A stretch of 64,000 nucleotides of DNA from Podarcis vaucheri (Eukaryota): assembly GCA_965113315.1 (NCBI GenBank), contig OZ220365.1, one strand, 5' to 3'. Shown here piece after piece: positions 25,682 through 64,000 of the stretch. The first letter of the stretch is position 1. Every line of letters starts with the position of its first letter. The notes below the pieces were generated by a model. It was not told the origin of the DNA. It did no database searches and saw only the letters and a list, made by a program, of their open reading frames with translations. The position numbers were made by a program, and so were the translations under genes.

Positions 25682-25726
25682 TATCTGAAATGAGACGGGG
25701 GAAATGTAAATTTTCTCTTCCTGCAG

Positions 25727-42184: not shown

Positions 42185-42230
42185 TTATATGTTCTAACTG
42201 GTTTCTCAAATCTCCCATAGTCATTATTCT

Positions 42231-42428
42231 TTCCAGTAGCACCTTAAAGACCAACTAAGTTAGTTCTTGGTATGAGCTTTCGTGTGCATGCACACTTCTT
42301 CAGAAGAAGTGTGCATGCACACGAAAGCTCATACCAAGAACTAACTTAGTTGGTCTTTAAGGTGCTATTGGAAGGAATTTTTTTATTTGTACTATGGCAG
42401 ACCAACACGGCTACCTATCTGTAACTGG
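42231..42428. mobile_element. Penelope-like element remnant: 143-bp palindrome with a minimal hammerhead-ribozyme-like core
   Basis: 71-bp arms 42231-42301 and 42303-42373 (1 mismatch, 1-nt spacer); 12-bp TSD AGTCATTATTCT at 42219-42230 and 42429-42440; minus strand reads CTGAAGA-A-GTGTGCATGCACAC-GAAA-GC-TC-ATAC. Confidence 0.75.
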
Positions 42429-43249
42429 AGTCATTATTCTGTTTGACAATCAGCCTATCCATGATACCCAGGTTCTGCCTTTCACATCGGGTTACATAAT
42501 CAAAAATCAAACTTTTTGATTATTTACCGCGTGTGTGTGTGTGTGTAATTAAATTTGTATACTGCTCTTCTTCTGCAGATCCCAGGGGTATTTCACGAGA
42601 TAAAAATACAAGATAAAAAAACAACAAGTTCGTTAAGTTTCTTGGCGATTTGGACCCCTAAATACTGAAAAATGGTGCACACTTACCTGTAAGGTAGGCA
42701 TGCCCAGAATTGAGATAGAGATAAAGTGCACCCAGCAGCGGCTTCTGCTACTGCAGCTGCGAGACAAGAAGTCCTTCCCCGAGGGAGTTTCCCTTCGGGG
42801 CTGACTTTCGAAGCCATATAGGGCAAGAGAAGGTCCCAAGCTCAACCTGTGGCTTAGCAGCGCGAAACCTTTAGGGGCGCCATTGCAGACGCCGAGAGAA
42901 ATGTTGAGGAGCAGTTCTCAAAAGTGCGGAGTTGTTTTCTGGTGGTGAAAGAAGTTTGGCAACGGAGCCAGGAAAGAGGACAAAGCAGACGTGGCCGACT
43001 GTCTTCCGAAACTCAGCCGGGCCTCCTCTTGTGTCTCTCGCTCCCAACCTTCAGGGACTCCTAACCGACTTTCCTGACTGAAACGGCAGCCTTCCTCCCC
43101 CGCGTCACTCGCTCCCTCAGCCCTACCTCACTTCACCACGTTAATAACGTACTATTACCCTAACGCAAGTATAAATTATTACAATAAATGTCAGGGGCAA
43201 TTCACGGTGTTGGGTCATTATTATAATCAAGGCTAGCGTGGTAAACATA

Positions 43250-44240
43250 AAGGTGCTTTCCTTGAAGGAAGCCGCCACGGCGTTTGAGCGGGGAGAGAGA
43301 AACGCGCACAAAGAAGGAGGGCAAAGCCCATATTCGAAAACCTCAATTCTAGCTCCCCCCCCCCGCACCCCGCCTCCTCCTCCTCCAGACGCGGCTGCTA
43401 ATCTGCTTCCGTGACGTCGCCCCTCATGGCAGCCAATGAGCTTGTGCTAAGGGGGACCTGGTACCGGCGGGAGGGGCGGGAGCTCCTCCTCCTCCTCCTC
43501 TTCTTCTAGATGAGAAGCAGCAGCAGCAGCCCCGGCCGAGCAGCGGATTGCTGGCAGAGGCGTCTGGAGGGGTCGGACGTAGCAGGCCGAGGAGAGGCGA
43601 CGGGGCTGGGTCCGCGGAAGAGCCATGGGGAACACCGTGGCTCGGGAGGATTTCGAGTGGGTTTATACGGACCAGCCGCACGCGGACCGGCGCAAGGAGA
43701 TCCTAAGTAAGTGCGCACTTTCGCCGCCTGCCGCTCCCCTTTTGGTCTCGTCTTCCTTTCTCTCCCCCGTTTCGCTGCGATGCCTTTTTTTGGGCGAAGG
43801 CGCTCGAGTCCTCCTTCTGCCCGCTCCTTGGCTCCCGAGGAGGCCGGGCGTGGCGGGCAGACGCCTCCCGGTCTTGCTCCCGGCCTCCGCCCTTGGCGCC
43901 CCGCACCGACGCCTCTTGTCTTCGGAGGAGGAAGCCCCGGCATTGGCTTTCTCGGCGGAATTCCCCACCCGGCCGACGGCGCTCCCTCCTTTGGGTCTTG
44001 GGTGATGGGGAGAGGAGTTCCCAGGGTTGGAGGGGAGCGAGCTGCCAACATCTGGAGAGACGCAGTGCGTCACATCCGAAGGCCTGGGGCCGGCCACCCG
44101 TTACAAGCACGTTGCTGCTTTCCTTTCCCTTGTCCCCCCGGCACGCCGCTTTTTCTCTTTTCAGTTTCGAAATCTGCCTGCGCATAATATGCGGGGAGGT
44201 GGTTCAAAGCGACCTTGGTTAACTGAGGACTTCGCCATGC
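43250..44240. promoter_or_regulatory. DEGS1 copy A CpG-island promoter with CRE/ATF-like site, CCAAT box and GC box
   Basis: CpG-rich; TGACGTCG at 43412-43419, CCAAT at 43433-43437, GGGGCGGGA at about 43473-43481. Confidence 0.7.
43625..43706 (+). CDS. DEGS1: Sphingolipid delta(4)-desaturase DES1, copy A, coding exon 1
   Basis: GCCATGG Kozak; [27 protein letters not shown]; GTAAGT donor; 82 nt. Confidence 0.96.
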
Positions 44241-44348
44241 CCAGCTGCTGCTTGGTGGCAGCCAAACAGGCTTTTTGAAATGGTTTTCGCAGGGTGCAGT
44301 GCTTTTGCCAACATGAAGTCTGATGGGATCTTTAGATAAAAAGAGGTA

Positions 44349-44566
44349 CAGTGGTACTTCGGGTTACATACGCTTCAGGTTACAGACTCCGCTAACCCAG
44401 AAATAGTACCTCGGGTTAAGAACTTTGCTTCAGGATGGGAACAGAAATCATGTAGCAGCGGCAGCAGGAGGCCCCATTAGCTAAAGTGGTGCTTCAGGTT
44501 AAGAACGGTTTCAGGTTAAGAACGGACCTCCGGAATGAATTAAGTACTTAACCCGAGGTACCACTG
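44349..44566. mobile_element. Tc1/mariner/pogo MITE in DEGS1-A intron 1
   Basis: TIRs and TA TSD; sibling of 24842-25070. Confidence 0.88.
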
Positions 44567-45260
44567 TATATAGATTGGAATAAATGCTGATGATGGTGGT
44601 TTTCAAATTTCCTACTGGCGGAGGACACTCCCCGGCTCCCCATCTTTGATTCTTACTTTTGGAGCTTTCATCTGTTTCCTGTTTCCAGGGAACATTCTAA
44701 GGTGGACTTTGATGTGTAGGACTGGGTAGGCCTACTAGACCTAGATATTGCCATGGCAAATGTGGTAGTAACTTGGAATGTCCAAACATTCTGTGGGTTG
44801 TGAGAGAAGATAAAAGAAAGGGAGAAGTTGTTCTTCATACCCTGCTGTTAGTGCTGCCCTCAGTGATGTGCTCAAAGTGTACCCTGGACAAAATGACTAA
44901 AATATACCCCCACGCTGAAGGGCGTGGAAAGGACAACGTCTGCTTTTACTATATAATAGAATGTGGGTTTAATTCCTCAGTCAGCTAGCTTTTCAGTAGG
45001 CTGTCTCTCTATGAAGGAATGGATGGCTGTAGTCTAGTTTGCAGGCAAAATTTAAAATGATCTGCCAACAGGTTGCAAGAGGGGTCAGTTTACTTTTGCC
45101 ACTGGCATTCTGTAGCTGGATTTAGCCAGGTGAGTGAAGTTGCTCAACCATCTCAGTTTCTTGATGGAGGAAAAGTGTGGGAGACCCTGTCGCTGTATTT
45201 GGAAGCTCAGGTTTTAGGTTGATCGTAGAGGTTTCTTTCACATGCCAAGGTGTTTGATAC

Positions 45261-45815
45261 TGTTACGGAAGGGGGGGGCATGTCTTCTTCACTACAATAT
45301 ATTTGCTCAATTTCTCTAGGACTCCATCACCCCTCCCCTGTCCTCCATAATCTCTCAAGTAATCCTGTCAAAATCACTCTGCCAAACCTTTCCTCTGGGC
45401 AATGCCAGGTGACAGACTATGTGTACATGGACCATTGTCTTCTCAGGATGTGCTTATCTGCGCATATCTCCAGCTCTGCATATTCCCCCTCCCTCCTCCA
45501 TCCGGCTCTCTGCATATTCACCCCCTCCCTCCTCCATATGTTAATCTGTGTAACCCAACCTCTTCTTAATGTATTCATGATGTAACTGGGATGTATTTTG
45601 CACTGTATTCTGGGATATGGAGGGAAATTTCAAAAGTTCATGTCACCCCTTTCTCTGGGTTCAATCTCGCCTTGAACCTGTTGCGCAATAAACTTGGACC
45701 TTCTGCAGTTTGCTCCTGTGTCCGGCTGAGCTCATTTTCTTCCGCAGGGACCCACGGACTTAGTCCGATGAGCTGGGTGGCAGAGTAACCCCGCACCCAG
45801 ATTTTAGCCGTAACA
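45261..45815 (+). mobile_element. Solo LTR (Gypsy/ERV-like) in DEGS1-A intron 1
   Basis: TGTTACGG...CCGTAACA inverted termini, internal AATAAA at about 45687, 4-bp TSD ATAC/GTAC; empty paralogous site in copy B at about 58548-58580. Confidence 0.8.
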
Positions 45816-46904
45816 GTACTCTTGGTTAGCAAACGAGAAGCTAGGAGAGTGGGGTGGCCCTGAGCATTATTAGTTAAACAGCATGCTTCTAGCCCTTTTA
45901 GTTCCTGAGAAGCATCAATAGGAGACAACGATCAAATTATACACTAAAAATGCCATTCACAAGTACACATGTCTCTTTCTATTTCCTTTGTCTCAAAAAA
46001 AAAAATAATCAGACTCCTGGTGTACAAACCTATTATGCAACTGTGTATGCAAATATAAACCAGCTTATTTTAGTAGCAGGGCAGTCCAATTTTTCATACC
46101 AAGTGGGAGTACTTTGACATGGAACCAGTGGGCCGCACACTGCCTTGTCCTGTGCAGGGGTGCCCGCACACCGCCTTCCCAAGGCTGGCTAAGGGAGGCA
46201 CTGGGCTTTGGGAAGGAGTCACAAGGCTCTGGCAGGGTCCTAGAGCACTCCCACCTTTTCCCAAAAGGTTAAAAAGTGCTAACTAGGCTTTGGGAAGGAG
46301 GTGGGACAGGAGGGCTCAAGGACCCTGCAAGAGCCCTTATGTCTCCTTCCCAAAGCCCTGCACCTTGTTTACCTTGTTTTCGGAAAGTGGGGGGGGGGAG
46401 AGTAAAATGTTGATGAGGGCTGCCATAAAAGCCACATCATTTCAGACCACCCAGTTCTACTATGTGAATTTGTCATCTACAGAATCAATATTTTTTTCTT
46501 GTTCAGAATGGAGAGTTTCTGGGTTGCTTGTATCACTGAAGACTTTTTGTTAGACACAGAGGGTAGCTTCAGCTACATTTTACCCACAGTGGACCTATCA
46601 AAATTAATGAGCACAACTAAGCTAGGTCCATCAACTTCAATGGGTCTACTATTCAGGAAACTTAGTTTGAGTGCCACCTAGAGTGTGGAATTTAAGTTGG
46701 TGCTGAGGAGATTGCTCTTGTTAGTGTAAACCTCTTTTTTGCTTGCATGATGAAACAATGATGAAACAATCTCCCTACTCCTCCCCCTGTGTGTGTTGTT
46801 CTGTGGGCTCTCATGAATCCCTCTCCCCAAACAGTTTGGAGGGACGAGAGAAAAGCCTTCCTATGCTAGTGGGAGTTGTTGACCTGACTCCTGCCACAGC
46901 AACT

Positions 46905-47215
46905 GATGTCTTCAATATACTCATAAAGACCACTCCCAATAACTTCATGTAGATACTAAATAGTATTGAGGACAAAATACTGTCCTGTGACACAACTGCT
47001 TGTGGTGGACACACATATAATCTCCTAATGCCATTCTCTGAATCCGGCTCTGTAATGAGTGGAACCAATGTGGAATTGTGCCCCAGCTCATGAAGATGAT
47101 CCCAGAGTACAACATGGTCGATTGTATCAAAAGCCACTGAGAGATCAACAGGGTTGCAATCCCCTTGTCTATCTCCCAAATATGGACCTCTGTCAGGGCA
47201 ACTAAGGCTGATTCC
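46905..47215 (-). mobile_element. Old L2 RT fragment in DEGS1-A intron 1, shared with copy B
   Basis: ORF remnants DLSVAFDTIDH and QDSILSSILFSIYM; paralogous to about 60350-60635. Confidence 0.7.
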
Positions 47216-47443
47216 ATCCCCTAACTTCGCCTGAACCATTATGGCATTGATGCTGTTGTTGTGCCTGTACTTCATTCATGTGGTTTTTACAGTAGACTGC
47301 AGAGTTGTACTAAAGCACCCTGTATATATTCAAACTTTTAACATGTATAGAATCCAATTATAAGACTCAGTTGTGGTATGATCTTCAAAGAGTATTTGTC
47401 TATTGACAGCAGTTATTGAAACTTTCTCTTTTCCTCCCAACAG

Positions 47444-48186
47444 GTAAACACCCAGAAATAAAAACTTTGATGAAACCAGACTACAACTTGATCTGGATAG
47501 CTACACTGATGGTCCTTGCACAGCTAGTTGCCCTTTACCTAGTTAAAGATTTGGAGTGGAAATGGGTTATATTTTGGTCATATGTGTTTGGCAGTTGTCT
47601 TGATCATTCCATGACTCTGGCTATTCATGAGATAGCCCACAACAGTGCCTTTGGCAATTGTAAACCTCTGTGGAATCGATGGTTTGGAATGTTTGCCAAT
47701 CTCGCACTTGGCATCCCATACTCTGTATCCTTCAAGAGATATCACATGGATCACCATCGTTATCTTGGCGGTGAAGGAGTTGATGTGGACATTCCTCTTC
47801 CCATTGAAGGATGGTTTTTCTGTACCCGTCTTCGAAAATTCTTTTGGATTATTCTCCAGCCCCTATTCTATGCTATTCGGCCTCTTTTTATTAATCCCAA
47901 ACCAATCTCTCGACTTGAAATAATGAATTTGTCAATTCAGTTTCTCTTTGATATTATCGTATACTATGTCTTTGGAGTAAAATCACTTGTCTACCTGATA
48001 ACAGCAGCTGTGCTTGGGCTAGGCTTGCACCCTATTTCAGGACACTTTATAGCCGAACATTACATGTTTTTAAAGGGATATGAAACATATTCCTACTATG
48101 GTCCGCTTAATAAACTTACATTCAACGTTGGCTACCATAATGAACACCATGACTTCCCTAATGTTCCTGGGAAAAACCTTCCACTG
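47444..48186 (+). CDS. DEGS1: DEGS1 copy A, coding exon 2 (all three histidine boxes)
   Basis: Pyrimidine tract and CAG acceptor; HEIAH, HMDHH and HNEHH boxes; DES1-type NSAFGNCK after box 1; GTGAGT donor; 743 nt. Confidence 0.97.
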
Positions 48187-48676
48187 GTGAGTACATTATA
48201 GTGTCCATTTACAACTAGTTACTTTCCTGGAGTTAAGCAACTCCATTTTAAACGAATGGATTGCTGGTATTCCACCACAGTGTGGTGATTTGCTGATGTA
48301 GGTTGGCAAATATATTAAGGCTGTAAATGTTGATTAAAGTGGTTTATCTTGATCCAAAGCATATTTTCAGACCAGTATTTAGAACCACAGCAATAGGCTA
48401 AACACAATACCTTATGTCAACTAGAATATCATATTACTTCAGACCAATGATATATATTCAGCTACTAATACATTTATGGAGGTTGTTCAGCTGCAGAAAT
48501 GTGGTCCTTGCTTCTAATGCTTAAAGCTCAGACACAGCTGGATAGACTATTAATGTTGACTCCTTTGTACAGCCTCAAAGCTGACCTTGAAACATAACCT
48601 GTTACTTCTACAAAACGGCCTTAGTGTTTGTTTAACCTCCTCCTCTTCAAAGGAAAGATACTTTTTGTACCTGCTA

Positions 48677-48921
48677 CAGTGGTGCCTCGCAAGAGGAAAT
48701 TATTCCATTCCTTGAGTCTCTTCGTCTTGCGGTTTTTTTGTCTTGCGAAGCACGGCTATTAACGGCTTAGCGGCTTTAAGAAAAAGGAAACAAACTCGCA
48801 AGAATTTGCAAGACGTTTCATCTTGCAAAGCAAGCCCATAGGGAAATTCGTCTTGCGGAACGACTCAAAAAACGGAAAACTCTTTCGTCTTGCGAGGCAT
48901 TCGTCTTGCAAGGTACCACTG
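48677..48921. mobile_element. Tigger-derived MITE in DEGS1-A intron 2
   Basis: CAGTGGTGCCTCGCAAGA...TCTTGCAAGGTACCACTG; TA TSD; internal match to the Tigger end at 9580-9717. Confidence 0.85.
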
Positions 48922-49801
48922 TACCTGACTAGGAAGTTATGCAGTGAATGAATGTTGGCTATTGCATGTATGACCAGTGCACTAAAGCTGCATTCTGTCT
49001 GTGCAGTTTTTTAAAAAGTTTTTTTAAAACCCCTCCTATTTTGGGTATATTAGTCGTTTTCAGTAGTTGTTTGTCTTTGTTGTGCTTTAGGGAATAAAAG
49101 CACTGTCAAGTGATTGGCTCAAGAGTGGAAAACTGCTAGCCCCCTGCATTTGTGAGGTTGCAGTTTCCATTCTTCCTCTGCAGGCATGACCAGCGACTAG
49201 GGATGATGGGAACTGTAGTAACATCTGGAAGGCCACTGGAAGTTGTAGTAACATCTGGAAGGCTCCCAATCCCTGCTTTAGATCTTTTAAAGTTTAAGAG
49301 GAATGTTTATTTTAAATTCATAATATTGTTTTTCTCTAATTTATGTTAATATATCATTTATGTTCCTAAGTGGTGTACATAAAAACAAGCCATAGAAAAT
49401 GGGACAATGAAAGAATACAAGGTATCATAAAATCTAATACTACAGTAAATGTGTAAAGGAACAAGGAAGTCTTAGTTGTGGGCTGGCAGTTCAGCAGGAA
49501 AGACTACCTGTCTAATCTCAGTTGGGATGGAGTTCCACAGCTTTGCACCAATCATGCTGAATTCACTGCTTCCAGTAGTTACTAGTTGTACAACTGAGCT
49601 ACAAGGGACCTCCAACAGGGACTTCTCCAAAGATTGCAGAGGTCAAGCAAGGATATAAGGGATCAGGCAGTGTAGTTCTGTGGGTAGACTCATGTGCTTG
49701 GTATGTTAAAATGAGGTGGGGTTACTGCTTCCAAAACTGGCTATTTAATGTCTAGCTGACAAAACTTTTTTCTAAATAACACTGGGTTTTTTAAATTGCA
49801 G

Positions 49802-49948
49802 CTGAAGAAAATGGCCCCTGAATACTATGAACATCTGCCACAGTATAACTCCTGGGTAAAGGTGCTTTATGATTTTGTGATGGATGACACTATCAGCCCT
49901 TATTCACGCATGAAAAGGCATTTAAAAGGTGAAGTGAAATTGGAGTGA
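49802..49948 (+). CDS. DEGS1: DEGS1 copy A, coding exon 3
   Basis: TGCAG acceptor; [48 protein letters not shown]; 82+743+147 = 972 nt = 323 aa. Confidence 0.96.
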
Positions 49949-50931
49949 AAAAAAATTCCTCTGCCGCCTCCAAGGACATAGACTCATGGAAGCTGGTACA
50001 AAGGTTTCGTTTGATCAGGATGTATTTGCTTTGTATCTTAACCTAGTCTGGACTGTGAATATATATGGATTACAATCTAGAACAAGATCTCTGAATTAAA
50101 ATATTGCTGGAAATAGAACATTCCAAGCTATTTGCTTTATTTTGTATAATTAAAGTTTAAAATATAACTTGCTGTATGCACAATGCTAGTATTAATGTTA
50201 CATAATGTGTTTCAGTTGCTACTCACTCGAACACTGGATTGTTCTTCAGGCCATTAATGTACCAGTGGTGTATCTTGGTTATTTTGAACTTGCTGCCACA
50301 ACTTTGGCTCTTCAATGTTTTGCTGACAAAACATTAATTTCCAAATTAAATTGCAGAATTGTTTTAGTTAGTGTAGATGCTGGAAAAAATGGCTGGCTAC
50401 AACTCCTCCTATATTGAGTTATGTCTTGGCCAATCCAAGTGCTAACCTAACTGATGGATTTACAATTGCTGCTATAAAGTATATATCCATTAAATCATGC
50501 TAGTGTTCATATAACTTCAAAATAGACAGGGATATGAATACCAACTTTTGACTGCCTATGCTCTACATTTCATTAAGCTAAATTATCATTTCCTGCAGCA
50601 GGCCCATTTCCTTGAGTATAGCTCTGCATTCCTTCTTTTCTGCATCTGTACAAAAGTGCTATGCCCTGCCTTCAAACCGATGCTTCTTTGCAAACAGACT
50701 AGATCTCCTGAAGTTTAGAAACAGAATAGTAGAGCCTATGTGTGTCGTGGTAACCATCTTGCGCTCTCTTAGCTGGGGCAAGAGCTAGAGTGTCGGTTGT
50801 TGACAGCAGGTAGCAAGTTTATAAAAGGTATAAAACATTGACTATGAGAATGCAAGTACCTCCTATAAAGGAGTATATGAAAGCTGTTGTTGTTTTTTTT
50901 TTAAAAAAAAAACCAAACTCTTGGGCACTTG

Positions 50932-50937
50932 AATAAA
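50932..50937 (+). terminator. Candidate poly(A) signal of DEGS1 copy A
   Basis: AATAAA about 1 kb after the stop codon; a second AATAAA lies at 51130-51135. Confidence 0.4.
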
Positions 50938-52440
50938 GATGATATTAGTGAAGTTTAACAAATGTGTGGAATGTTCTTGAGGAAAGCAAATTCTATCTGC
51001 TTCCTTATCTCTGGGAGGCAGAGGATTTTCTCGTGATTATGCAATGTTTTTAAAGCTGTGTCAGTTATATAGGCAGCACATTTATGCAACTTAATTAATG
51101 CGTTACACCTACAGATCCTTGCATGCAGCAATAAACTTGATGCACTGCAGTGAGGATCTTTTCATTGTCAAGGTAATTCATTACTGGTGGATTAAAGTAC
51201 AGATTTTGCGGGGGCTTGTCTTGAGTCTTGCTTCAGCTATTTCATCCAAAATTACCTAGCCTCCCTTTGTTTTAGTCATACTTGTAAAACCTGCAAGGTA
51301 AGGAACGTGCAATTTTTTAAACCAAACATGCAAGCTTCTTCAAAATTATCCCCACAAACAGCTATTTTCCCTTTAGTTGTCACTATTTCTCTTTAGTTTG
51401 GCACATTTCCCAGAAAAAGGAAGCAAGCCAGTAAACCTGTGGCTCATTTGCGCTTCAGACTGCAAACAAGCTCCTCGCTGCTCCCCCACTCCCCAGATTC
51501 CTACACATAGAAAACTAGAATGGCAGAGAGAGATCCAGGCCAGAATGTTACTCTTGCTTTTGTTGGAATAATATGAATCCTCATCTGGAGTCTAAAGAGG
51601 TGCAGTCTAAACTAGGTTACTACCTCTTCTGCTGTTAATGTGAGAACTACACTGCTTCCTAGGAGTCAATTGTGGAGCAGTTGTTTCAGTCATAATGTAC
51701 AATGGAAATCTAAAGCAGTTAACAGATGTCAACCCACTGATCAAATGGGACTCTTGTTTTCCCAACTATCAACTTCATCAAGCACCTAGTCTTGTAGCCT
51801 ACCAGAGAAACATAATGCTGTACCTTCCAGATTGTACTACAAGCCGCAGTTGCAACTGGCCGTTCCTCATCTGCAGCAGCAGTTGAAAGTCGTCTGGATT
51901 GAAGAGGAAGTTGGAGCTCGTGATGTATTTCAAGCAGAAACTGAATTTCAACTATGCCTCGATACAATCTGCACATGTGACTTGTTTTACAGAAACGCAT
52001 GCTGGCTCTTAGTAACCACAACATCCTGGAATCCTGAGAGGAATTCCTGGCAATGCAGGTAAACTTTGCTGTTATCGTCACAAGTAACTAAAAGCAAGTC
52101 AGTCCTAAACTGAAATCGGCATCTGGTCTAGAATTTTATAGATTCCACAGACCAACTGCTTAATTATCTGTTCTAGGACCTTTCCAGGTATCAAAAGTCA
52201 ACCTGACCAGTCAGTTGCTGTTATATAAATTTAATTAGTTAATAATAATAACAACAATATTACCCACCCACAGGGCGGTTTACTATATAAAGTTGTTGGA
52301 CTTGAAACAATTTGCTTGGGTCCTCCCCATGAATCTCATCCCACCAAGTTTCAGCAATGCCTGTTACATCATATTTGCCACCCTGCATTGAGAATACAGG
52401 TTAATCTTGTTCAGAGTAATCCCATGCTCTATGCGTTAGT

Positions 52441-54010: not shown

Positions 54011-54804
54011 AGTTCCCCTGCGAATGTCCCCGTGCCAAGGGGTATAGAGAAAATTGAAATCATGAGGCAGTCCCTCCAGCTGCTTCCATACTGTTTTTTC
54101 TCCTGCGAATGGAGAGATGTTAAATAGGGAGTCCTGGCAGGTGTTATTATGCCCATGAGCCAGATGTTTCCCTAATACTTGTTTTTAGTATCCTGGGAAA
54201 AGACATGGTTGATGAGCTAGCTATGAGTATACACTGCAGAATTTTGATGCAGGTCACACTTGTGATCTATTTCTGCCTCTTTTTTGCTGAATGCATTTTA
54301 CACAGGCAACAGAGCCAAGCTTTACCAGCAAGGTATGAGTAATACAAGTTATGTTGTGGTAGAAAAGTAAACGCCTAATGCATATGGAAGCCTAGTCATG
54401 GGCTTTTACTCTCAATCCAAAGCTTTATGCTTACATCTGCAGTTAGTGAAAATGAAAGATCTGTTCCATACAACAGCTAATGGGCTTATATTTCAATAGA
54501 ATTTAGAAAGACCATGAAGAATTGGCAGAACTTGGAAAAAGTAAATAGAGGAATGTGGTGTGGCGGCGGGCAGGGGAGGTCAAGAGAAGAATAGGGATAG
54601 TCAAGTTGAATGGTGAGAGAGCTATTAGGACAGTAGAGGAAATACTATGGCTAACCCTACCCCCAGGCTCTCTGCCTACTGAATCCACCTCTGCTCATAC
54701 CCTCAATGCAGCCCTTTCTGTGTCCTTCCCTTAATATGGTACCCATCTTCATGCTGCCCCAGCACCTCTGGCACAGGAAAAAGGATAGCAAGTGCATTCC
54801 TGTA

Positions 54805-54978
54805 CAGTGGTACCTCAGGTTACATACGCTTCAGGTTGCATACGCTTCAGGTTACAGACTCCACTAACCCAGAAATAGTATCTCGGGTTAAGAACTTTGC
54901 TTCAGGATGAGAACAGAAATCGTGCAGCGGCGGCACAGCAGCATCAGGAGGCCCCATTAGCTAAAGTGGTCTTCAGGT

Positions 54979-55009
<31 letters not shown>

Positions 55010-55315
55010 AAGAAGAAGAAGAAGAGTTTGGATTTGATATCCCGCCTTTCACTCCCTTTAAGGAGTCTCAAAGCGGCTAACATTCTCCTTTCCCTTCCTC
55101 CCCCACAACAAACACTCTGTGACGTGAGTGGGGCTGAGAGACTTCACAGAAGTGTGACTAGCCCAAGGTCACCCAGCAGCTGCATGTGGAGGAGCGGAGA
55201 CGCGAACCCGGTTCCCCAGATTACGAGACTACCGCTCTTAACCACTACACCACACAATTTCAGGTTAAGAACAGACCTCCAGAAGGAATTAAGTTCTTAA
55301 CCCGAGGTACCACTG
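54805..55315. mobile_element. Tc1/mariner/pogo MITE with a nested Squam3-type SINE
   Basis: TIRs and TA TSD; colinear with 44349-44566 once 54982-55254 is removed. Confidence 0.85.
54982..55254 (-). mobile_element. Squam3-type SINE with (CTT)n tail
   Basis: Reverse complement of 31238-31481; (GAA)n run at about 54981-55025. Confidence 0.85.
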
Positions 55316-56067
55316 TACTCTATATCAATCTGCTTTGTTTCAATATATGAATATATTCTTCGAAAATCCTCACAAAGTTCACTGACCAGGGGCTTTGATT
55401 TTGTGCACACTTATTTGGAAGCCCCATTGCTTTCAGTGGAACTTATGTGCAAGTAAGCATATGCAGAATTGGGCTAGATGAATTGCGCTGATACAAGGTT
55501 TCTGATAACTCAATGCTGCAGTTGCAAGGTAAAACAGTCCCAAGGACACAACTTCCTTCAGAGCTCATCTTCAAAGCCATATGACAAGAGAAGGTCCCAA
55601 GCTGGTGTATAAAAGGAATACTCATAAAAACCTGTGATTAAAATAAAAATAAAAAGACCGCTGCCTTCCCCAGCACTTCTAATATTGGATACATTTAGCA
55701 TATTCAGGAATCAAAAGTTTTGTGTCTCTTGTAGGAAATGTTTACTTTTTCGTGCATGCAACTTGAGTAGTGCTGAAGCAGCGAAAATGAGGCAGCTATG
55801 CAAAAGGAAATGTGAGGAACAGTTCTTAAGTGTGAAGACTTTTGGAAGTATGAAAACAGGCAGGGAAGAAGTAAAAGCAAGGGTCACTGTCCTCTGAAAC
55901 TCAGCCAGGCCTCTCGTCATGTGCTCCCACTTTTCTGACTGAACCAGCACCCTCTCTCCGTGCTTCTTCAACCCTACGTCGCTGTTAAAAAATAATATTA
56001 TTAATTACAATTTGTACAGTATCATGTTAATGACAATTCATGGTATGGCATAATTGTGAATACTGCT

Positions 56068-56857
56068 GGGCACAAGATATAGGTCATAATATTATGTTGG
56101 AAGACTAGGAAAGGTTGTGGAAAACTGATTTAAAATTTACAGATTGTTCTTTGCTGAAATAAAATTACATGAAAATGATGTATAGATGGTATATAACACC
56201 AGTGCAGATAGGAAGGATGTACAAAACTACTTCAAATATATGCTGGAAATGCACAGAAAAAGAAGGGACTTTTTACCCTATGTGGTGGGACTGTAGTAAG
56301 ATTTTAAAAAATTGGGAAATGATATACAACGAGCTGAAGAAAATGTTCCAATTAACATTTGTAAAAAAACCGGGAGAATTTTTGTTAGGGATTGTAGGAA
56401 AAGACCTGCCAAGGAAATTCAAAAATATATTTATGTATGCAACAACGGCGAGAGTCTTAATAGCACAAGGATGGAAGAATGAGGAAATCCCGACCAAATA
56501 ATTGTGGCAAGAGAAACTGATGGACTACGCGGAATTGGCGAAATTGCCAAATTACGTGATAAGGACAACTGTGATTTTAAAGAAGGGGAACCTTTTACAA
56601 AGTACTTAAAGAAATAACAAAATGAACTGGACTCCTTGGCAGGTTTTGAATAAACAATTTTTTTATTGGTAACATATTGATAAATTAAGGATTTTTACAA
56701 CTTTATAATATGCAGAAAATAACATGTGCTGAGAAACCAGAAAGAGGAGCTGAGGGAAGTCTGGGCTGGTTTTTTCCTTTTTGGGGGAGGGAAATGAGGA
56801 TGATGTATTTTTGATAAAATGTTATGTTGAAATTCCTAATAGTTTTTTTTTAAAAAA
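56068..56857 (+). mobile_element. 5'-truncated L1 upstream of DEGS1-B
   Basis: ORF 56169-56501 YRWYITP...CWKC...MWWDC (L1 ORF2 C-terminus); 13-bp TSD TGTGAATACTGCT at 56055-56067 and 56858-56870. Confidence 0.88.
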
Positions 56858-56910
56858 TGTGAATACTGCTAACGTAATTTAACACCTAATAATTGAAAAG
56901 ACACCTAATA

Positions 56911-57018
56911 GTGTGAGGTACGTCACGGGAGGGTGGGGGATTTGGATTCATATATGCTTTGTGTGATAATGATGTTTCGTTTTGAATATAAAACTGTAAA
57001 ATTTAATAAAAACTATAA
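56911..57018 (+). mobile_element. 108-bp L1-like 3' UTR insertion
   Basis: G-rich tract, AATAAA and A-rich end; 16-bp TSD GAAAAGACACCTAATA at 56895-56910 and 57019-57034. Confidence 0.75.
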
Positions 57019-57159
57019 GAAAAGACACCTAATATTATGCAGCTCAAAAATATCAACTCTTTCGAAATGAAGCCACCCCAACATTTTTGCCGGGGAGGCA
57101 GAAAAATGAATGGCAAGGCGACGAGGGCAAGAAGCGGGCACATCTTAAAACTCCCATTG

Positions 57160-57500
57160 CCTCCAGGCAGGGCCGCTAATGGGCTTCTGTGACGTCACCG
57201 TTCCCTGTAGCCAATGGTTTTTGGGACGTGGGGTCGGTGGGCGGGAAACCATCCTTCCCTACCTGGCGGCGGGCGCGAGTGTGTGGAAACGGCGCCGCCG
57301 GCGAGGAAGGAGCCATGGGCAACGCTGTGGCTCGAGAGGATTTCGAGTGGGTTTATACGGACCAGCCGCACGCGGACCGGCGCAAGGAGATCCTGAGTAA
57401 GCGCGCGCCTTCAGGCCCTCCCCGCTCCCCTTTGGGGGTCTCGCCCCACACGATGCCTCGGTTGACGAAGGCGCTCTCGAGTCCCCTTCTCTCTCCGACC
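57160..57500. promoter_or_regulatory. DEGS1 copy B promoter: perfect CRE and CCAAT box, small CpG island
   Basis: TGACGTCA at 57190-57197 and CCAAT at 57211-57215, the same 21-nt offset as in copy A. Confidence 0.7.
57315..57396 (+). CDS. DEGS1: DEGS1 tandem copy B, coding exon 1
   Basis: GCCATGG Kozak; [27 protein letters not shown]; GTAAGC donor; 82 nt. Confidence 0.95.
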
Positions 57501-57645
57501 ATAAGCTCTGCCCGTGTAGCCTGGACAAAATGGCTGAAGTAACATCCCCTCCCCTGCTGAGGGTGGAAGGGGCGACGTTTGCTTTTAAGAGTGCCAACTT
57601 GAATAAAATATTTTGGGGGGAGGGAGAGGCCTGCCCACATAGGGC

Positions 57646-57735
57646 CATAGCTGGCAACGTTTCCATTTTTTTAAGGGGAATTCCCTTATTCCTAATAGGA
57701 TTCCTCGCAAGAAAAGGGAAAAGTTAACAGCTATG
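57646..57735. mobile_element. 90-bp mini hAT MITE in DEGS1-B intron 1
   Basis: CATAGCTG...CAGCTATG; perfect 8-bp TSD CATAGGGC. Confidence 0.85.
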
Positions 57736-59989
57736 CATAGGGCACACTATTTGAATGGCAGTGTCCATCAACAACTTCTTTTTTTGATATCTATATCATT
57801 TTATATTTTTAAGAAAAATCTCAAAGCGGTTTACAGAATATTAAAACATCAATAAAACAAGCTGTGGAAAGTCAAATATAGAGTATACAGCCACAACAAC
57901 ATAATTAACAGAAAACTAAAATATTATCTTAAAAATTTCAAAATAAAACATTACAAAGGAGTTCAACTACAGAATACACAAACTAAGTTAACAAAAAAAT
58001 TTCAAAAAAAAAAATGCTAAGTGAAGTCAAATATAAAATGCACATTTAAAACAGCATAATTAACAAGAGAATAAAATATCATAAGCATGACACGGCTATT
58101 TGGCAGGCACAAAAAGATGGGGCAAAAGACTCCAAATAGTTAGGGTTTGTTGGGGGGACAGACTCTCAAATATTTTATTGGGGCAAAGAGACCTCCTCTC
58201 AGCCCCTAGGAGTTGGTCAGCAACTAGCTTTCCAGTAGGATCTCTTAAGAGAGGGACGGGTGTAGGCTGGTGTGTTGGGCACACTTCAAAATGGTGTGCC
58301 AACAAGCTGCTACAGGTGTAGTATCATAGACTCATAGGATTGGAGAGTTAGCAGGGGTCGCCAAGTATAATCTAGCCCAAGCCCCTGCAATGCAAGGTGT
58401 CATTTTATCTTATGAGCGACAGAAATTGGCTGAGTGGTTGAAGTTGCCCAGACACCACCAGTTTCTTGGTGGAGTGGAAGTGTGGGGAGACCCTGTAGCT
58501 GTATTTGGAAGCTCAGCTTTCAAGCTGATCCTAGAGGCATCTTTTTTCACATGCTAAGATGTTTGTTGCTCTTAGTGAGCAGGTGAGGTGCTAGAAGAGT
58601 AGAGTGGCCCTGAGCTTTTAGTTAACAGCACGCTTCTAGTCCTTGTGGCTGCTGAGAAGCATCCGTAGGAGACAATGATCAAGTTTTATGCTGACAAATG
58701 CCATTCCCAATTACACATGTCTCTTTCCATTTTATCCGTCTCAAAATAAATTCAGAAACCTGATGTACAAACCTAGTAAGCAACTGAGTATACAAACTCA
58801 GTTTATTCTATCCAGCATCTTGATTTTATTTTTCTAGCACCGGATAGAGAATCTCTAGGTTGCCTACATCACAGTATACTTCTTGCTAGACATAGGGTGG
58901 TAGTCAACTACTTTTTACTAAGAGTGGACCTATTAACGAACATGACTAAGGTCCATTAATTTCAATGGGGTCTATTCATGAAATTTGGATCCCCCCCCAT
59001 AGGCGGAATTCAGAGTAGCACTAAGGAGATTGCTCTGTTAGTTCCATCAGGCAAGCAAAATGTGCTATCTCCCCTTTCTTCCTCCTGTGGTTCTTCTGAC
59101 CCCCAGAGCCAATTTGGGGGAGGCAAATGGGTAGGAGAGGGAGGAGAGCCTTATAGCATTAGTAGGACTTGTTACTGGCTCATACTACTGCAACTGTTTA
59201 ATTGAATCTGCCCAGAGAAAAGTTAAGAATTGAATGACCTCAAACTATATTAAAGCAGATCACCTTGGGATTGGCACGGTTTTCTGTGTCTGCTTAGTCG
59301 ACCATGCTGACTTTCATGTAAAAGTTAGGTCTGTGAGAAGTCTGCATATCTGATGCCATATTTGTTCATGTTCTTAGTCAAAGGCAACTTGCTGGAAATG
59401 AAGCTTAGTGAAATCATGGGAATAGATAGCATGGATTTCAGTGCTACTACTCTTGATCTGAATTATTAAAATCTCAGTGGACAGGAGTAAATAATTTTAT
59501 CACAAAGTCATGTTAGCAGAAATTGCCCGCACACTGTTCCAGTCACCACTGGCAGCATAAGGCCCAAAATAGTTCACTTCTACAAATGATAAGGCCTCAG
59601 TAATACAGTTCTGGATGTTGCTCTATACATACAGTTTTCAGCTTTATAGCTACAATTAAGAAGTATTTTTGCTGCTCCAGCTATTCAAGACATAAAACAG
59701 ACTCTGACTCACAGACTCACTGACTGACTAATAAACTGACATGCCTTAATCATTTATATAGACAGTGCAACTGGTTTGTCTGACCATGCACATCTTGGCT
59801 TATGGGGTGATTTATGCCCATGAAGGAAATTAACCCTTTCTTCCATGTTCAGTTCCTCCAATAAATCACATCTTGGTTACAGTCTCAAAACTATATTTTA
59901 AAAATACCTGTTCTTGCATATAGCTCCTTAGTGAAGTAGATGTCAACATGTAACTTAACTGACCTCATATTTACTGCCTTCTGGACCTG

Positions 59990-60635
59990 TCTCAAAAAGA
60001 GCCTCACACAGAGCATGTTACAGTAATCTAGTTATGAGTGGTGATCAAGCTGTCCTTTTCCAGGAAAGGGCATAGTTAGTGTAACTGCTTCTTGTCATGG
60101 AGGCTATCTGAGTCTCCACTGACAGATGGATCTAAGAACATCCCAAACTATCTACCTCTTCTTTCAGAGGGTGTGCAACTCTCTACAGAACTGGTAATTT
60201 CTCAAGATCCCATACCTGGAAGGAACTTACCCACAAATTTAATTTCAGTTGGTTTGTCACTCAGCCCACCACCGTCCAGAAATATCAAAACCTCTTCTGA
60301 TTTGGTTGTAACTGAGAAATAGAACTGCATGTCATCAGCATACTCTTAATGACCACTCCCAATAGCTTAATGTAGATCTTAAATAGTACTGGGGACAAAA
60401 ATTGTCCTGTGACACAATGGCTTGTGGTGGACACACCTATAATCTCCTAATGTCATTCTCTGAATCCTGCTCTGTAATGAGTGGAACCAGTGTGGAATTG
60501 CACCCCAGCTCATGAAGATGATCCAAGAGAACAACATGGTTGATCGTATCAAAAGTCACTGCGAGATCAATAGGGTTGCAGTCCCCTTGTCTATCTCCCA
60601 AATATGGACCTCTGTCAGGGCAACTAAGGCTGATT
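59990..60635 (-). mobile_element. Old L2 fragment in DEGS1-B intron 1
   Basis: Plus-strand GTCATCAGCATA (minus-strand YADD) and TTACAGTAATCTAG (minus-strand LDYCN) remnants; paralog of 46905-47215. Confidence 0.7.
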
Positions 60636-60879
60636 CCATCCCCTAACTTAGCCTGAACCATTATGGCAGTGGTGCTGTTGTTGTGCCTGTACTTCATTCA
60701 TGTGGATTTTACATTAGACTGCAGAGTTGTAGTAAAGCATCCTGTATGTATTCAAACTTTTAACATGTATATAGGCTTGTATAGAAAGTAGAATCCAAAT
60801 GATTGTGGCATGATCTTCAAAGAGCATTGTCTATTGACAGCTGTTATTTGAAACTTTATCTCTCTTTTTCTCCCAACAG

Positions 60880-61622
60880 GTAAACACCCAGAAATAAAAA
60901 CTTTGATGAAACCAGACTACAACTTGATCTGGATAGTTACACTGATGGTGCTTGCACAGCTAGTTGCCCTTTACCTAGTTAAAGATTTGGAGTGGAAATG
61001 GGTTATATTTTGGTCATATGTGTTTGGCAGTTGTCTTGATCATTCCATGACTCTGGCTATTCATGAGATTGCCCACAACAGTGCCTTTGGCAATTGTAAA
61101 CCTCTGTGGAATCGATGGTTTGGAATGTTTGCCAATCTTGTATTTGGCATCCCATACTCTGTATCCTTCAAGAGATATCACATGGATCACCATCGTTATC
61201 TTGGCGGTGAAGGAGTTGATGTGGACATTCCTCTTCCCATTGAAGGATGGTTTTTCTGTACCCGTTTTCGAAAGTTCCTTTGGGTTATTTTTCAGCACTT
61301 CCTCTTTGTTATTCGGCCTCTTTTTATTAATCCCAAACCAATCTCTCGACTTGAAATAATGAATTTGTCAATTCAGTTTCTCTTCGATGTTATGGTATAC
61401 TATGTCTTTGGAGTAAAAGCACTTGTCTACCTGATAACAGGATCTCTGCTTGGGTTAGGCTTGCACCCTATTTCAGGACACTTCATAGCTGAACATTACA
61501 TGTTTTTAAAGGGATATGAAACATATTCCTACTATGGTCCGCTTAATAAGCTTACGTTCAATGTTGGCTACCATAATGAACATCACGACTTCCCTAATGT
61601 TCCTGGAAAAAATCTTCCACTG
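60880..61622 (+). CDS. DEGS1: DEGS1 copy B, coding exon 2
   Basis: CAG acceptor; three intact His boxes; open frame; GTGAGT donor; 743 nt. Confidence 0.96.
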
Positions 61623-61988
61623 GTGAGTACATTATAATGTCCAACTAGCTACTTTGCTGGAGTGAAGCAACTCCCTTATAATTCAATGGATTGATATTAT
61701 TCCACTTCCGTGCCGTGATTTGCTGATGAAGGTGGGAATATACATTAAGACTAAACTCTATGTCTCCAAATTTTAAATTTGCTCCTATGTGGGGTAAACT
61801 AGTTGTTTTCCTTGCTAATTGCCACAATTCAGTGCTGGGTTGCCATTGTTTTTTGTAGACTTCTGCAAGAAAGATGCCTGCAATTCAATAGAGCTTCATC
61901 TTTGTGGAGCTTTAGGGATCTACTATTATTTATACCCTACCCATCTGGCTGGGTTTCCCCAGCCACTCTGGGCGGCTTACAGTATATA

Positions 61989-62068
61989 CAGGGTGAGTCT
62001 TTTAAAAGAGGCCCCGTGGAACATGTGCACTCTGTATCCACAGGGCCTCTTTTAAAGGACTCGCCCTG
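61989..62068. mobile_element. 80-bp palindromic mariner-type MITE inside an L2 tail fragment (about 61921-62102)
   Basis: CAGGGTGAGTCTTTTAAAAGAGGCCCCGTGGA...TCCACAGGGCCTCTTTTAAAGGACTCGCCCTG; TA on both sides. Confidence 0.8.
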
Positions 62069-63076
62069 TAGAAAAACATACTAAAACATCAGACATTAAA
62101 AAGGTAGCAATTGTAGCTCCTGCACATACCAATTAGCATACCAATTAGCATTGCTTCATCTCTGTAGAGAATGTTTTCCATTCCACATTGTTCAAGAGGC
62201 ATTCCTGACCAATGTGCAAGTAAACAGCTTCTAAAACACATTATAAAACATTAACTAGCTATGCCAAAGGAGTATGACAATGTTCCAGAGATCCCGTTCT
62301 AGATTGTACTCATATATTCATAGTTCAGACCTGAAAAGCCTTTAGGGGGTGTGGAGGAGTGGGTAGAAAATCTGCATCCCATGAGCTTACCTTGGGACCT
62401 AAGCCATTGTTTCTAGAAAACAGGGTCAGTGGCTGTCAGTGCCCTGCTCCTCCTCAAAGGCAGCATCCTTTGTGTTCCTGTTGTCTGATTAGGAAGTTGC
62501 ATACTGAGTGAATCCTGGGTATTTACTTGTATGACTGGCACACTTCCCGATACAGGTGATATGTCCCTTAGATATTGGGGTGCAATTCATATCTGCCTCA
62601 GCAAGCATGGCTAATGATTAGGGATGATGGGAGTTGCAGTAACATCCAGAAGGCCACAGGATCCCAATCCCTAATTTAGACCTTTTAAAGTTCAAGAGGA
62701 TTAATCATTTTACAATTCAAAATATTGTGTTTATTTTACTTTAAAACACTTATATACCGCTTAAGTATTTGCATTTCTAAACAGTGCAATTAAAAACAAC
62801 CAACAGAAAATGGAGCAATAATCTCAGTTGGGGTGTAATTTCCAGGCTTCGGCCCACTGCACTAAATGCATGGCTAATAATAGGGGCTGTGCATCTGAGC
62901 CATGGGGAAGCCTCGAAGATTTCAGTGATCAGGCCAGGATATAAGGGAGCAGATGGTGTAGTTCTGTGCGTAGACATACATAAAATTAGTTCCTAATTCT
63001 GAGATGAGATTACTCACCACAACACTGGCTATTTAATATTCTGCTGACAAACTTTAATTTCTTTCTTTCATTATAG

Positions 63077-63223
63077 CTGAAGAAAATGGCCTCTGAATAC
63101 TATGATCATCTGCCACAGTATAACTCCTGGACAAAAGTGCTTTATGACTTTGTGATGGATGACACTATCAGCCCGTATTCGCGAGTGAAAAGGCATTTAA
63201 AAGGTGAAGTGATACTGGAGTGA
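63077..63223 (+). CDS. DEGS1: DEGS1 copy B, coding exon 3
   Basis: TTTCTTTCTTTCATTATAG acceptor; [48 protein letters not shown]; completes a 323-aa product. Confidence 0.95.
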
Positions 63224-64000
63224 AAAAAGCCCCACTTCCGTAAACACCAAAGACAGCCTAGTAGCTGGTGGAAGGTTTTGTTTGATCAAGATGAATTTGC
63301 TTTGTATCTTGATCTGGTTTGAACTATGAATGTATGAGTACAATCTAGAACAGGATCTCTAGAACTAAACGTTCTCATGTTCTTTTGCCATATAACTATG
63401 TTTCATGATGTGTTTTAGTAGCTGTTGACTTGAACATTGGTTTGTTCTTGTAAGCATTTTATCTTACATGCAGCATATGTACTTGTTCAGTTTTTTACAC
63501 TTGCTGCCCAAGATACTAGCCTTTGCTGACAAGCCTTCCAAATTAACTTCTTTTAATACCCCAGAATTGTTTTAATTAGTGTAGTAGCTGACCAAAATGG
63601 CTGGCTACAACTCCTCCTATATTGAGTTATGTCTTGGCCAATCCAAGTGCTAACCTAATTGATGGATTTACAACTGTTGCTGTAAAGTATATATCCGGTG
63701 AATAAGGCTAGTGTTTGTGTAATTTCAAAACACATGGATATGATTACCATGGATATGATCTCCTGCAGCAGGCCCATTTCCCAGAAAACATCTGCATTCC
63801 TTTTTTAATGCATCTGTACATAAGAGCTATGCCCTGCCATCAAATTGATGCTTCTTTGGAAACAGACCAGAACTCTTGAAGTTTAGAAACAGAATAGTGG
63901 CCACAGTAGTGGAGCCTACGTGTGTCCCAGTAACCATCTTGTGCTCTCTTAGCTGGGGCAAGAGCTGGAGTGTCAGATGTTGACAGCAGGTAGCAAGTTT

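What the first reader, a model, noticed from the sequence alone, without database searches (positions are those of the whole stretch)
42820..64000. Tandem duplication of DEGS1 with two intact, diverging copies
Seen: two complete 3-exon genes (82/743/147 nt) about 13.3-13.7 kb apart. Both have canonical splice sites, Kozak ATGs and all three His boxes, and they differ at about 24 of 323 residues. Homology runs from at least 42820/55583 (shared CAAGAGAAGGTCCCAAGCT) through the 3' region to the window end. Different TE insertions in each copy argue against an assembly artefact. Known: at the FBXO28-DEGS1-NVL locus of human and chicken, DEGS1 is single-copy; it makes ceramide from dihydroceramide and has a reported retinol-isomerase activity. 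Inference: this is a lineage-specific desaturase array, possibly serving epidermal barrier or shedding lipids, femoral-gland secretions, or retinoid handling in a cone-rich retina. More copies may lie beyond the window.
Basis: partly seen in the sequence, partly recalled or inferred. Interest (0 to 1): 0.8.

Follow-up and report, generated by a model that had tools for sequence, protein, structure and literature searches.

The report
Lacertid tandem DEGS1 gene duplication
A wall-lizard-type genome carries two intact side-by-side copies of the ceramide-making desaturase gene DEGS1; the pair is shared by several lacertid lizards, and the second copy has rebuilt one short helix at the same residues that independent rodent duplicates of this gene also changed.

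Summary
Two head-to-tail DEGS1 genes lie 13.3-13.7 kb apart, each with 82/743/147-nt exons, GT-AG introns, a Kozak ATG and three His boxes. They differ at 24 of 323 residues.

It is not an assembly artefact. Non-coding identity is only 60-89%, and each copy holds its own repeats. RefSeq already lists A-type and B-type proteins (DES1 / DES1-like) for Podarcis muralis, P. raffonei, P. lilfordi, Lacerta agilis and Zootoca vivipara.

On the trees all lacertid copies form one clade, and the B copies group across genera. The duplication is therefore lacertid-specific and older than the split of those three genera. No paper on it was found.

Both copies are constrained (dN/dS 0.23). The 5' half of exon 2 looks gene-converted.

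Seven of nine polarised B-lineage changes fall in residues 163-171. They replace Pro167 and Tyr170, which no canonical DES1 or DES2 in my sample changes. Muroid and Perognathus DES1-like paralogs arose independently and changed the same sites (165, 170, 171; 167 in Perognathus).

I infer that copy A is the canonical enzyme and copy B handles substrate differently. This scan's only other notes on this are on the same window.

The parts
42792..55554 (+). Duplication unit A (first homology block to the start of unit B)
   Evidence: Colinear blastn blocks between A and B; 19-mer at 42824/55585
55555..64000 (+). Duplication unit B, cut by the window end
   Evidence: the 3' alignment still holds 83% identity at base 64000
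43412..43481 (+). Copy A core promoter elements: CRE-like TGACGTC 43412-43418, CCAAT box 43431-43438, GC box 43474-43481, inside a CpG-rich stretch of about 1.4 kb
   Evidence: consensus matches conserved between the copies; function inferred
43625..43706 (+). Copy A exon 1 coding part (82 nt, Lipid_DES N-terminus)
46901..47443 (.). 3' end of intron 1 of copy A, with a retroelement-like fragment (ORFs on the minus strand) shared with copy B at 60323-60879; 89% identical
   Evidence: Pfam gave no family for these ORFs
47444..48186 (+). Copy A exon 2 (743 nt; FA_desaturase, three His boxes)
47830..47874 (+). Copy A codons 157-171, canonical patch (LQPLFYA)
49802..49948 (+). Copy A exon 3 coding part with stop codon
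52632..54156 (-). LINE reverse-transcriptase remnant in the spacer between A and B
   Evidence: Pfam RVT_1
57190..57246 (+). Copy B core promoter elements: CRE-like 57190-57196, CCAAT 57209-57216, GC box 57239-57246; the CpG-rich stretch is only about 400 bp
57315..57396 (+). Copy B exon 1 coding part
60880..61622 (+). Copy B exon 2; its translation is identical (247/247) to Podarcis muralis DES1-like XP_028580378
61266..61310 (+). Copy B codons 157-171, derived patch (FQHFLFV): 12 point substitutions in 45 nt, 9 of them replacements
63077..63223 (+). Copy B exon 3 coding part with stop codon

Best explanation
The window comes from a lacertid lizard, nearest to Podarcis. It holds a head-to-tail tandem duplication (unit of about 12.8-13.7 kb) of DEGS1, the sphingolipid delta4-desaturase that turns dihydroceramide into ceramide. 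Shown: the duplication arose after lacertids split from the other sampled squamates and before Zootoca, Lacerta and Podarcis diverged, and it has been kept since as two complete genes. Each copy has its own first exon and conserved CRE / CCAAT / GC-box promoter elements. Both are under purifying selection. The 5' half of exon 2 has the signature of gene conversion between the copies. Copy A keeps the canonical vertebrate sequence. Inferred: copy A is the housekeeping enzyme. Copy B keeps all catalytic His boxes, so it is probably still a di-iron desaturase. Shown: in the Lacerta+Podarcis lineage, B underwent a burst of replacements in a hydrophobic helix (residues 163-171). These include the loss of Pro167 and Tyr170, which no canonical protein in my sample changes, and the new sequence has since been conserved. 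Independently duplicated DES1-like genes of muroid rodents and of Perognathus changed the same positions. Inferred: this helix lines the membrane-embedded substrate path. Its remodelling would change which sphingoid or N-acyl chains (or another lipid) the B enzyme accepts. That would be neofunctionalisation of substrate handling, not loss of function.
For: Gene structure and integrity. Real and old duplication: non-coding K2P distance 0.12-0.59 against 0.049 in exon 2; copy-specific repeats; A-type and B-type proteins in five lacertid species. Timing: lacertid clade 100/99; B clade including Zootoca 98/93 and 94/94; Rhineura and other squamates outside. Constraint: dN 0.034, dS 0.143, omega 0.23. 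The patch is FQH[F/L]LFV in Lacerta and three Podarcis species. Gene conversion: 3 synonymous differences per 77 sites in codons 29-150 against 24 per 129.5 elsewhere, Fisher p=0.002. Promoter elements kept in both copies. Patch: 7 of 9 polarised B-lineage changes lie in 163-171, P<5e-6 under uniform placement. In 139 other vertebrate DES1/DES2 proteins, 138 have P167 and 126 have Y170, and every exception is a derived DES1 paralog. Convergence: sites 165, 170 and 171 changed in all three derived lineages, uniform permutation p=4e-5. The AU test rejects one clade of derived copies (delta lnL 182, p about 3e-149). The AF2 model places the patch inside helix 156-177. A published docking model has ceramide reach the active site through a hydrophobic tunnel with its chains in the membrane half (PMC10696257). 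Weak sign of transcription: 14 small contig sets (55-153 Mb, guessed to be RNA) hold 26-40% of the words of 60880-64000, while only 11.5% of its 31-mers are shared with copy A.
Against: No coordinates of the model were available, so contact between the patch and the substrate tunnel is not shown. Model confidence over helix 156-177 is moderate (block means about 69-84). The overall A-versus-B rate difference is not significant (4 against 9 changes, p=0.27). The permutation tests assume equal site rates. Patch omega is 0.73 on 12 substitutions, which does not prove positive selection. Zootoca's B-type protein has the canonical patch, so the derived patch is not a feature of every B copy. Copy B has no AATAAA or ATTAAA in the 777 nt between its stop and the window end.
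Confidence: 0.62

Rival explanations
1. Both copies do the same chemistry. The pair is kept for dosage or split expression (tissue or stage), and the patch changes are nearly neutral or merely compensatory.
For: All His boxes and most of the protein are unchanged. The promoters have diverged: B has a short CpG stretch, a different upstream region and different 3' signals. Zootoca B keeps the canonical patch. Patch omega is below 1.
Against: Pro167 and Tyr170 are replaced in no canonical DES1 or DES2 of my sample, only in derived duplicates, in three independent lineages. After the burst the patch is conserved across Lacerta and Podarcis.
Confidence: 0.25
2. The two copies work as one transcription unit. 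Exon 1 of A is spliced either to A's exons 2-3 or to B's exons 2-3, as alternative exon sets.
For: RefSeq models Lacerta agilis as one gene whose isoform X2 (P0126) has an A-type N-terminus (MGNT) joined to B-type exons 2-3.
Against: B has its own intact exon 1 with a Kozak ATG, a GT donor and conserved CRE / CCAAT / GC-box elements. B-type N-termini (MGNA) are modelled in P. muralis, P. raffonei, P. lilfordi and Zootoca. Both modes could coexist.
Confidence: 0.08
3. Copy B is a decaying duplicate under relaxed constraint, on its way to becoming a pseudogene.
For: B changed residues that are replaced in no canonical protein of my sample. It has a shrunken CpG stretch. No canonical poly(A) signal is seen before the window end.
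Against: The 323-codon frame and splice sites are intact here, and full-length B-type proteins occur in at least four other species. Omega is 0.23. The derived patch is conserved between genera.
Confidence: 0.04
4. Assembly artefact: two haplotypes, or a collapsed and re-expanded repeat, placed in tandem.
For: None found.
Against: Non-coding identity is 60-89% and the repeat content differs between copies. Both types are present in five species' annotations.
Confidence: 0.01

Closest known systems
Vertebrate DEGS1 / DES1 (sphingolipid delta4-desaturase, EC 1.14.19.17)
   Same: Lipid_DES plus FA_desaturase domains, three His boxes, 323 residues, three coding exons. Both copies fall inside the DES1 clade, not the DES2 clade. 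Copy A has the canonical helix 156-177.
   Different: Two tandem copies instead of one. The lacertid stem branch is fairly long (0.078), and Pro115, present in 136 of 139 other sequences, is replaced in both copies.
Rodent DES1-like paralogs (muroid clade, to which I assign mouse 9130409I23Rik from memory; Perognathus DES1-like)
   Same: Lineage-specific duplicates of DES1 that keep the His boxes but replace L165, Y170 and A171 (and P167 in Perognathus). These are the same sites as in lacertid copy B.
   Different: Independent origin (tree; AU test). The rodent copies are far more diverged (62-72% identity to B). The papers found list the mouse gene only in expression tables, e.g. liver, and one calls it a DEGS1 ortholog. 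No biochemical function was found.
DEGS2 / DES2 (bifunctional delta4-desaturase / C4-hydroxylase)
   Same: An ancient paralog of the same fold, and an example of a DES duplicate with changed chemistry.
   Different: Separate clade (100/100). The DES2 proteins in the sample keep P167 and Y170, so copy B is not DES2-like in this patch.
Stearoyl-CoA desaturase (PDB 4ZYO)
   Same: A published superposition shows the same di-metal His centre as the DEGS1 AF2 model (PMC9663297).
   Different: About 12% sequence identity according to that paper. No PDB chain matches exon 2 by sequence. No residue-level mapping of the patch was made here.

Membership tests
DEGS1 / DES1 sphingolipid delta4-desaturase | N-terminal Lipid_DES domain (PF08557) | tested here: met
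   Exon 1 of both copies, E about 7e-12, 45 bits against a cut-off of 23
DEGS1 / DES1 sphingolipid delta4-desaturase | FA_desaturase domain (PF00487) with three His boxes HX3H, HX2HH, HX2HH | tested here: met
   Exon 2 of both copies, 84 and 78 bits; HEIAH89, HMDHH128, HNEHH259 in both
DEGS1 / DES1 sphingolipid delta4-desaturase | Groups with DES1, not DES2, on a tree | tested here: met
   DES1 and DES2 split at 100/100; both window copies lie inside squamate DES1
DEGS1 / DES1 sphingolipid delta4-desaturase | Conserved neighbourhood FBXO28-DEGS1-NVL | tested here: inconclusive
   ORFs at 3625-4203 and 25666-26121 (+) look like the FBXO28 N- and C-termini from my memory. Pfam and the Atlas did not confirm this. 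NVL would lie beyond the window.
DEGS1 / DES1 sphingolipid delta4-desaturase | Dihydroceramide delta4-desaturase activity | not testable with these tools
   Needs expression in DEGS1-null cells and lipid analysis
Rodent DES1-like (Degs1l-type) paralog clade | Common descent from the rodent duplication | tested here: not met
   Lacertid B is nested in lacertid DES1. A single clade of derived copies is rejected, delta lnL 182.
Rodent DES1-like (Degs1l-type) paralog clade | Replacement of L165, Y170 and A171 in helix 156-177 | tested here: met
   B has F165, F170 and V171 (plus H167, as in Perognathus DES1-like). So B resembles this clade in the patch but is not a member.

The most novel reading that the evidence does not exclude
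Helix 156-177 (residues 165, 167, 170, 171) is a specificity switch of DEGS1-type desaturases. It has been flipped independently in lacertid copy B, in muroid DES1-like genes and in Perognathus DES1-like. On this reading, these 'DES1-like' genes are a convergently evolved class of desaturases with a different lipid substrate or product from canonical ceramide synthesis. In lizards this might concern skin or gland sphingolipids.
Probability: 0.3. Interest if true: 0.7.

Novelty: new member of a known kind. Interest (0 to 1): 0.48.

Why it matters
DEGS1 performs the last step of ceramide synthesis. It is a human disease gene (hypomyelinating leukodystrophy 18), and no experimental structure exists. 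Natural duplicates that keep the catalytic centre but repeatedly rebuild one helix point to residues that may set substrate choice. This can be tested directly by swapping residues 163-171 between the two lizard copies, or between mouse Degs1 and its DES1-like paralog. For lizard biology, the finding gives a conserved, lacertid-specific lipid-enzyme paralog whose tissue use is unknown. The duplication itself is an ordinary tandem gene duplication that automatic annotation already lists. The added value lies in the dating, the gene-conversion pattern and the convergence with rodents.

Tried and rejected
1. Frameshift pair as the cause of the 157-171 cluster: rejected. The two copies align base for base with 12 point substitutions and no indel.
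2. Assembly artefact: rejected.
3. A third copy inside the window: none found by tblastn.
I therefore have no codon data from other species, no branch-site test and no copy count beyond the window.
Paralog-specific expression and the splice joints therefore stay untested.
6. PDB sequence search with exon 2 of A: no hit.
7. Literature searches for DEGS1 with Podarcis, lizard, duplication, lacertid, Degs1l or DES1-like: nothing relevant. For mouse 9130409I23Rik only expression lists turned up.
8. Atlas and Pfam on the upstream FBXO28-like ORFs: uninformative.
9. Relative-rate count of A against B: not significant.
10. The joined (spliced) protein was never sent to a search tool. All searches were done exon by exon, by reference. 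The joined coding sequence was used only inside local scripts for counting differences and dN/dS.
11. Fold search on the AF2 model was left out. It returns no residue-level contacts, and the fold relation to 4ZYO is already published.
Full report
**What is in the sequence**

The window holds two complete DEGS1 genes on the + strand. Copy A has coding exons at 43625-43706, 47444-48186 and 49802-49948. Copy B has them at 57315-57396, 60880-61622 and 63077-63223. Each set is 82/743/147 nt, with AG acceptors, GT donors, a GCCATGG start and one terminal stop. The three His boxes (HEIAH89, HMDHH128, HNEHH259) are intact in both copies.

The copies differ at 24 of 323 residues and 52 of 972 nt. Colinear homology runs from 42792/55555 to 50820/64000, where the window ends.

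Pfam finds Lipid_DES in exon 1 and FA_desaturase in exon 2 of both copies. There is no third copy in the window.

All database searches were made exon by exon, by reference. The joined protein was never sent to a search tool. The joined coding sequence was used only inside local scripts for counting.

**Is the duplication real, and how old is it?**

Non-coding blocks are 60-89% identical (K2P 0.12-0.59), against 95% in exon 2. Each copy has segments the other lacks, and some of these are interspersed repeats with further copies in the window. A retroelement-like fragment just upstream of exon 2 is shared by both copies, so it predates the duplication.

The best protein matches are lacertid DES1 / DES1-like entries. 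The translation of copy B exon 2 is identical (247/247) to Podarcis muralis XP_028580378. Copy A is 241-242/247 identical to the A-type proteins of P. muralis and P. lilfordi. The 90% cluster holds an A-type and a B-type protein for P. muralis, P. raffonei, P. lilfordi, Lacerta agilis and Zootoca vivipara. Automatic annotation therefore already lists the pair.

I found no paper on the duplication in the held library.

On maximum-likelihood trees all lacertid copies form one clade (100/99). Rhineura (an amphisbaenian), anguimorphs, iguanians, snakes and geckos lie outside it. The B copies of Zootoca, Lacerta and Podarcis group together (98/93; 94/94). The duplication is therefore lacertid-specific, as far as annotated proteins show, and older than the split of these three genera. 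An earlier origin masked by gene conversion cannot be excluded.

**Selection and gene conversion**

Between A and B, dN is 0.034, dS is 0.143 and omega is 0.23, so on average both copies are constrained.

Synonymous divergence is uneven. There are 3 differences per 77 sites in codons 29-150, against 24 per 129.5 sites elsewhere (Fisher p=0.002). The intron block just upstream of exon 2 is also unusually similar (89%, reaching 92-95% at 47000-47299). I read this as gene conversion over the 5' half of exon 2 and part of its upstream intron. This is an inference.

**Regulatory regions**

Both copies keep a CRE-like TGACGTC, a CCAAT box and a GC box in the same order, 70-215 bases upstream of the ATG. 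Further upstream their sequences are unrelated, apart from the 50-bp block at the edge of the duplication unit.

Copy A sits in a CpG-rich stretch of about 1.4 kb; copy B's is about 400 bp. Copy A has four AATAAA/ATTAAA signals within about 550 nt of its stop. Copy B has none in the 777 nt before the window ends, and the sites that align with three of A's signals are mutated or deleted in B.

**The derived patch in copy B**

Twelve point substitutions, nine of them replacements, fall in codons 157-171 (61266-61310), with no indel. Polarised with eight squamate outgroups, 9 changes are on the B lineage and 4 on the A lineage. Seven of the nine B changes lie in residues 163-171. None of 200,000 random placements was as clustered.

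Copy A has LQPLFYA, like nearly all vertebrate DES1 and DES2 proteins. Among 139 non-lacertid sequences, 138 have P167 and 126 have Y170. Copy B has FQHFLFV. The same patch is present in Lacerta (FQHLLFV) and in three Podarcis species, so it has been conserved since it arose. Zootoca's B-type protein keeps the canonical patch.

An AlphaFold2 model of the P. raffonei B-type protein (mean pLDDT 76) puts the patch inside helix 156-177. No coordinates were returned, so contacts could not be measured.

**Convergence with rodent paralogs**

This is my own observation. Every sequence in the sample that lacks Y170 or P167 is a derived DES1 duplicate: lacertid B, twelve muroid DES1-like proteins (including a shorter Peromyscus eremicus isoform, P0054) and the Perognathus DES1-like protein.

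The muroid DES1-like genes form their own clade inside rodent DES1 (98/94). The Perognathus copy is sister to its own DES1 (96/83). A tree forcing all derived copies into one clade is rejected (delta lnL 182, p about 3e-149).

Sites 165 (L to F in all three lineages), 170 (Y to F, to V/I/L, or to W) and 171 (A to V, to I/L/F, or S to I in Perognathus) changed in all three. P167H is shared by lacertid B and Perognathus. A uniform permutation gives p=4e-5 for the triple overlap. That test ignores rate variation among sites, but these sites are otherwise slow, which makes the overlap more striking, not less.

From memory, I take the mouse member to be 9130409I23Rik. In the papers found it appears only in expression tables, and one paper calls it a DEGS1 ortholog.

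**Mechanism**

Shown: two intact, constrained genes with their own promoter elements; a canonical A copy; and a B copy with a conserved, convergently derived helix.

Inferred: A is the housekeeping dihydroceramide desaturase, and B is still a di-iron desaturase with remodelled substrate handling. A published docking study has ceramide reach the DEGS1 active site through a hydrophobic tunnel, with its chains in the membrane half (PMC10696257). It does not name these residues.

The main rival is that the two copies do the same chemistry and differ only in expression. A single transcription unit with alternative exon sets is suggested by the L. agilis annotation, where isoform X2 joins an A-type exon 1 to B-type exons 2-3. 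It is unlikely to be the whole story, because B has its own exon 1 and promoter elements.

**What could not be done**

I therefore have no orthologous DNA, no codon-based branch tests and no copy count beyond the window.

I worked beside those places afterwards and sent none of their letters to any search tool.

The only hint of transcription comes from 14 small contig sets (55-153 Mb), which the tool guesses to be RNA. They hold 26-40% of the sampled words of 60880-64000, while only 11.5% of that stretch's 31-mers are shared with copy A. This suggests B transcripts exist but does not prove it.

**Verdict**

This is a real, conserved, lacertid-specific tandem duplicate of DEGS1. Databases already annotate it, but I found no paper that describes it. 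It is a new member of a known kind. Its moderate interest comes mainly from the convergent remodelling of one helix in independent DEGS1 duplicates, which makes a substrate-specificity hypothesis directly testable.

Noticed in passing
proteins P0038, P0050, P0054, P0062, P0066, P0077, P0086, P0087, P0091, P0092, P0096, P0098, P0120 (rodent DES1-like): Independent rodent DES1 duplicates replace the same residues as lizard copy B (L165F, Y170 to a hydrophobic residue, A171 to a larger residue). Perognathus DES1-like even shares P167H.
   Followed up: yes
P0126 (Lacerta agilis XP_033000582, isoform X2): RefSeq models the L. agilis pair as one gene. Isoform X2 joins an A-type N-terminus (MGNT) to B-type exons 2-3. 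This could be a read-through or chimeric transcript, or a modelling artefact.
   Followed up: partly
window 63224-64000 versus 49949-50500: Copy B has no AATAAA or ATTAAA in the 777 nt after its stop. Copy A has four within about 550 nt, and the sites aligned with three of them are mutated or deleted in B. The 3' UTRs probably differ in length.
   Followed up: partly
window 63200-63215 (exon 3 of B) and P0130: The 360-aa P. muralis B isoform leaves the frame after ...RHLKG. That fits an internal GT donor (AAAG|GTGAAG) six codons before the stop, spliced to an unknown downstream exon.
   Followed up: no
window 47446-48186: Copy A differs at 5-6 of 247 residues from every annotated Podarcis A-type protein (unique L157, I198, I199). 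Copy B is identical to P. muralis B over exon 2. The source species or lineage is therefore not settled.
   Followed up: partly
window 47444-47810 and 47000-47299: Synonymous and intronic divergence between the copies drops sharply here (98-99% and 92-95% identity). This looks like a gene-conversion tract.
   Followed up: yes
window 3625-4203 and 25666-26121 (+): ORFs that I recognise from memory as the F-box N-terminus and the coiled-coil C-terminus of FBXO28, upstream of DEGS1-A. Pfam and the Atlas did not confirm this.
   Followed up: partly
window 7434-9172 (-): Remnant of a pogo/Tc5-type DNA transposase (Pfam DDE_1, CENP-B_N, HTH_Tnp_Tc5), probably inside an FBXO28 intron.
   Followed up: no
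window 52632-54156 (-): LINE reverse-transcriptase ORFs (RVT_1) in the spacer between copy A and copy B.
   Followed up: no
residue 115 of both copies (window 47704-47706 in A): Pro115, present in 136 of 139 other DES1/DES2 proteins, is Ala in A-type and Val in B-type lacertid proteins. Varanus and Anolis sagrei also have Ala.
   Followed up: partly
window 42219-42440: Another note of this scan reports a 143-bp palindrome with a hammerhead-like core just upstream of the duplication unit. I did not examine it.
   Followed up: no
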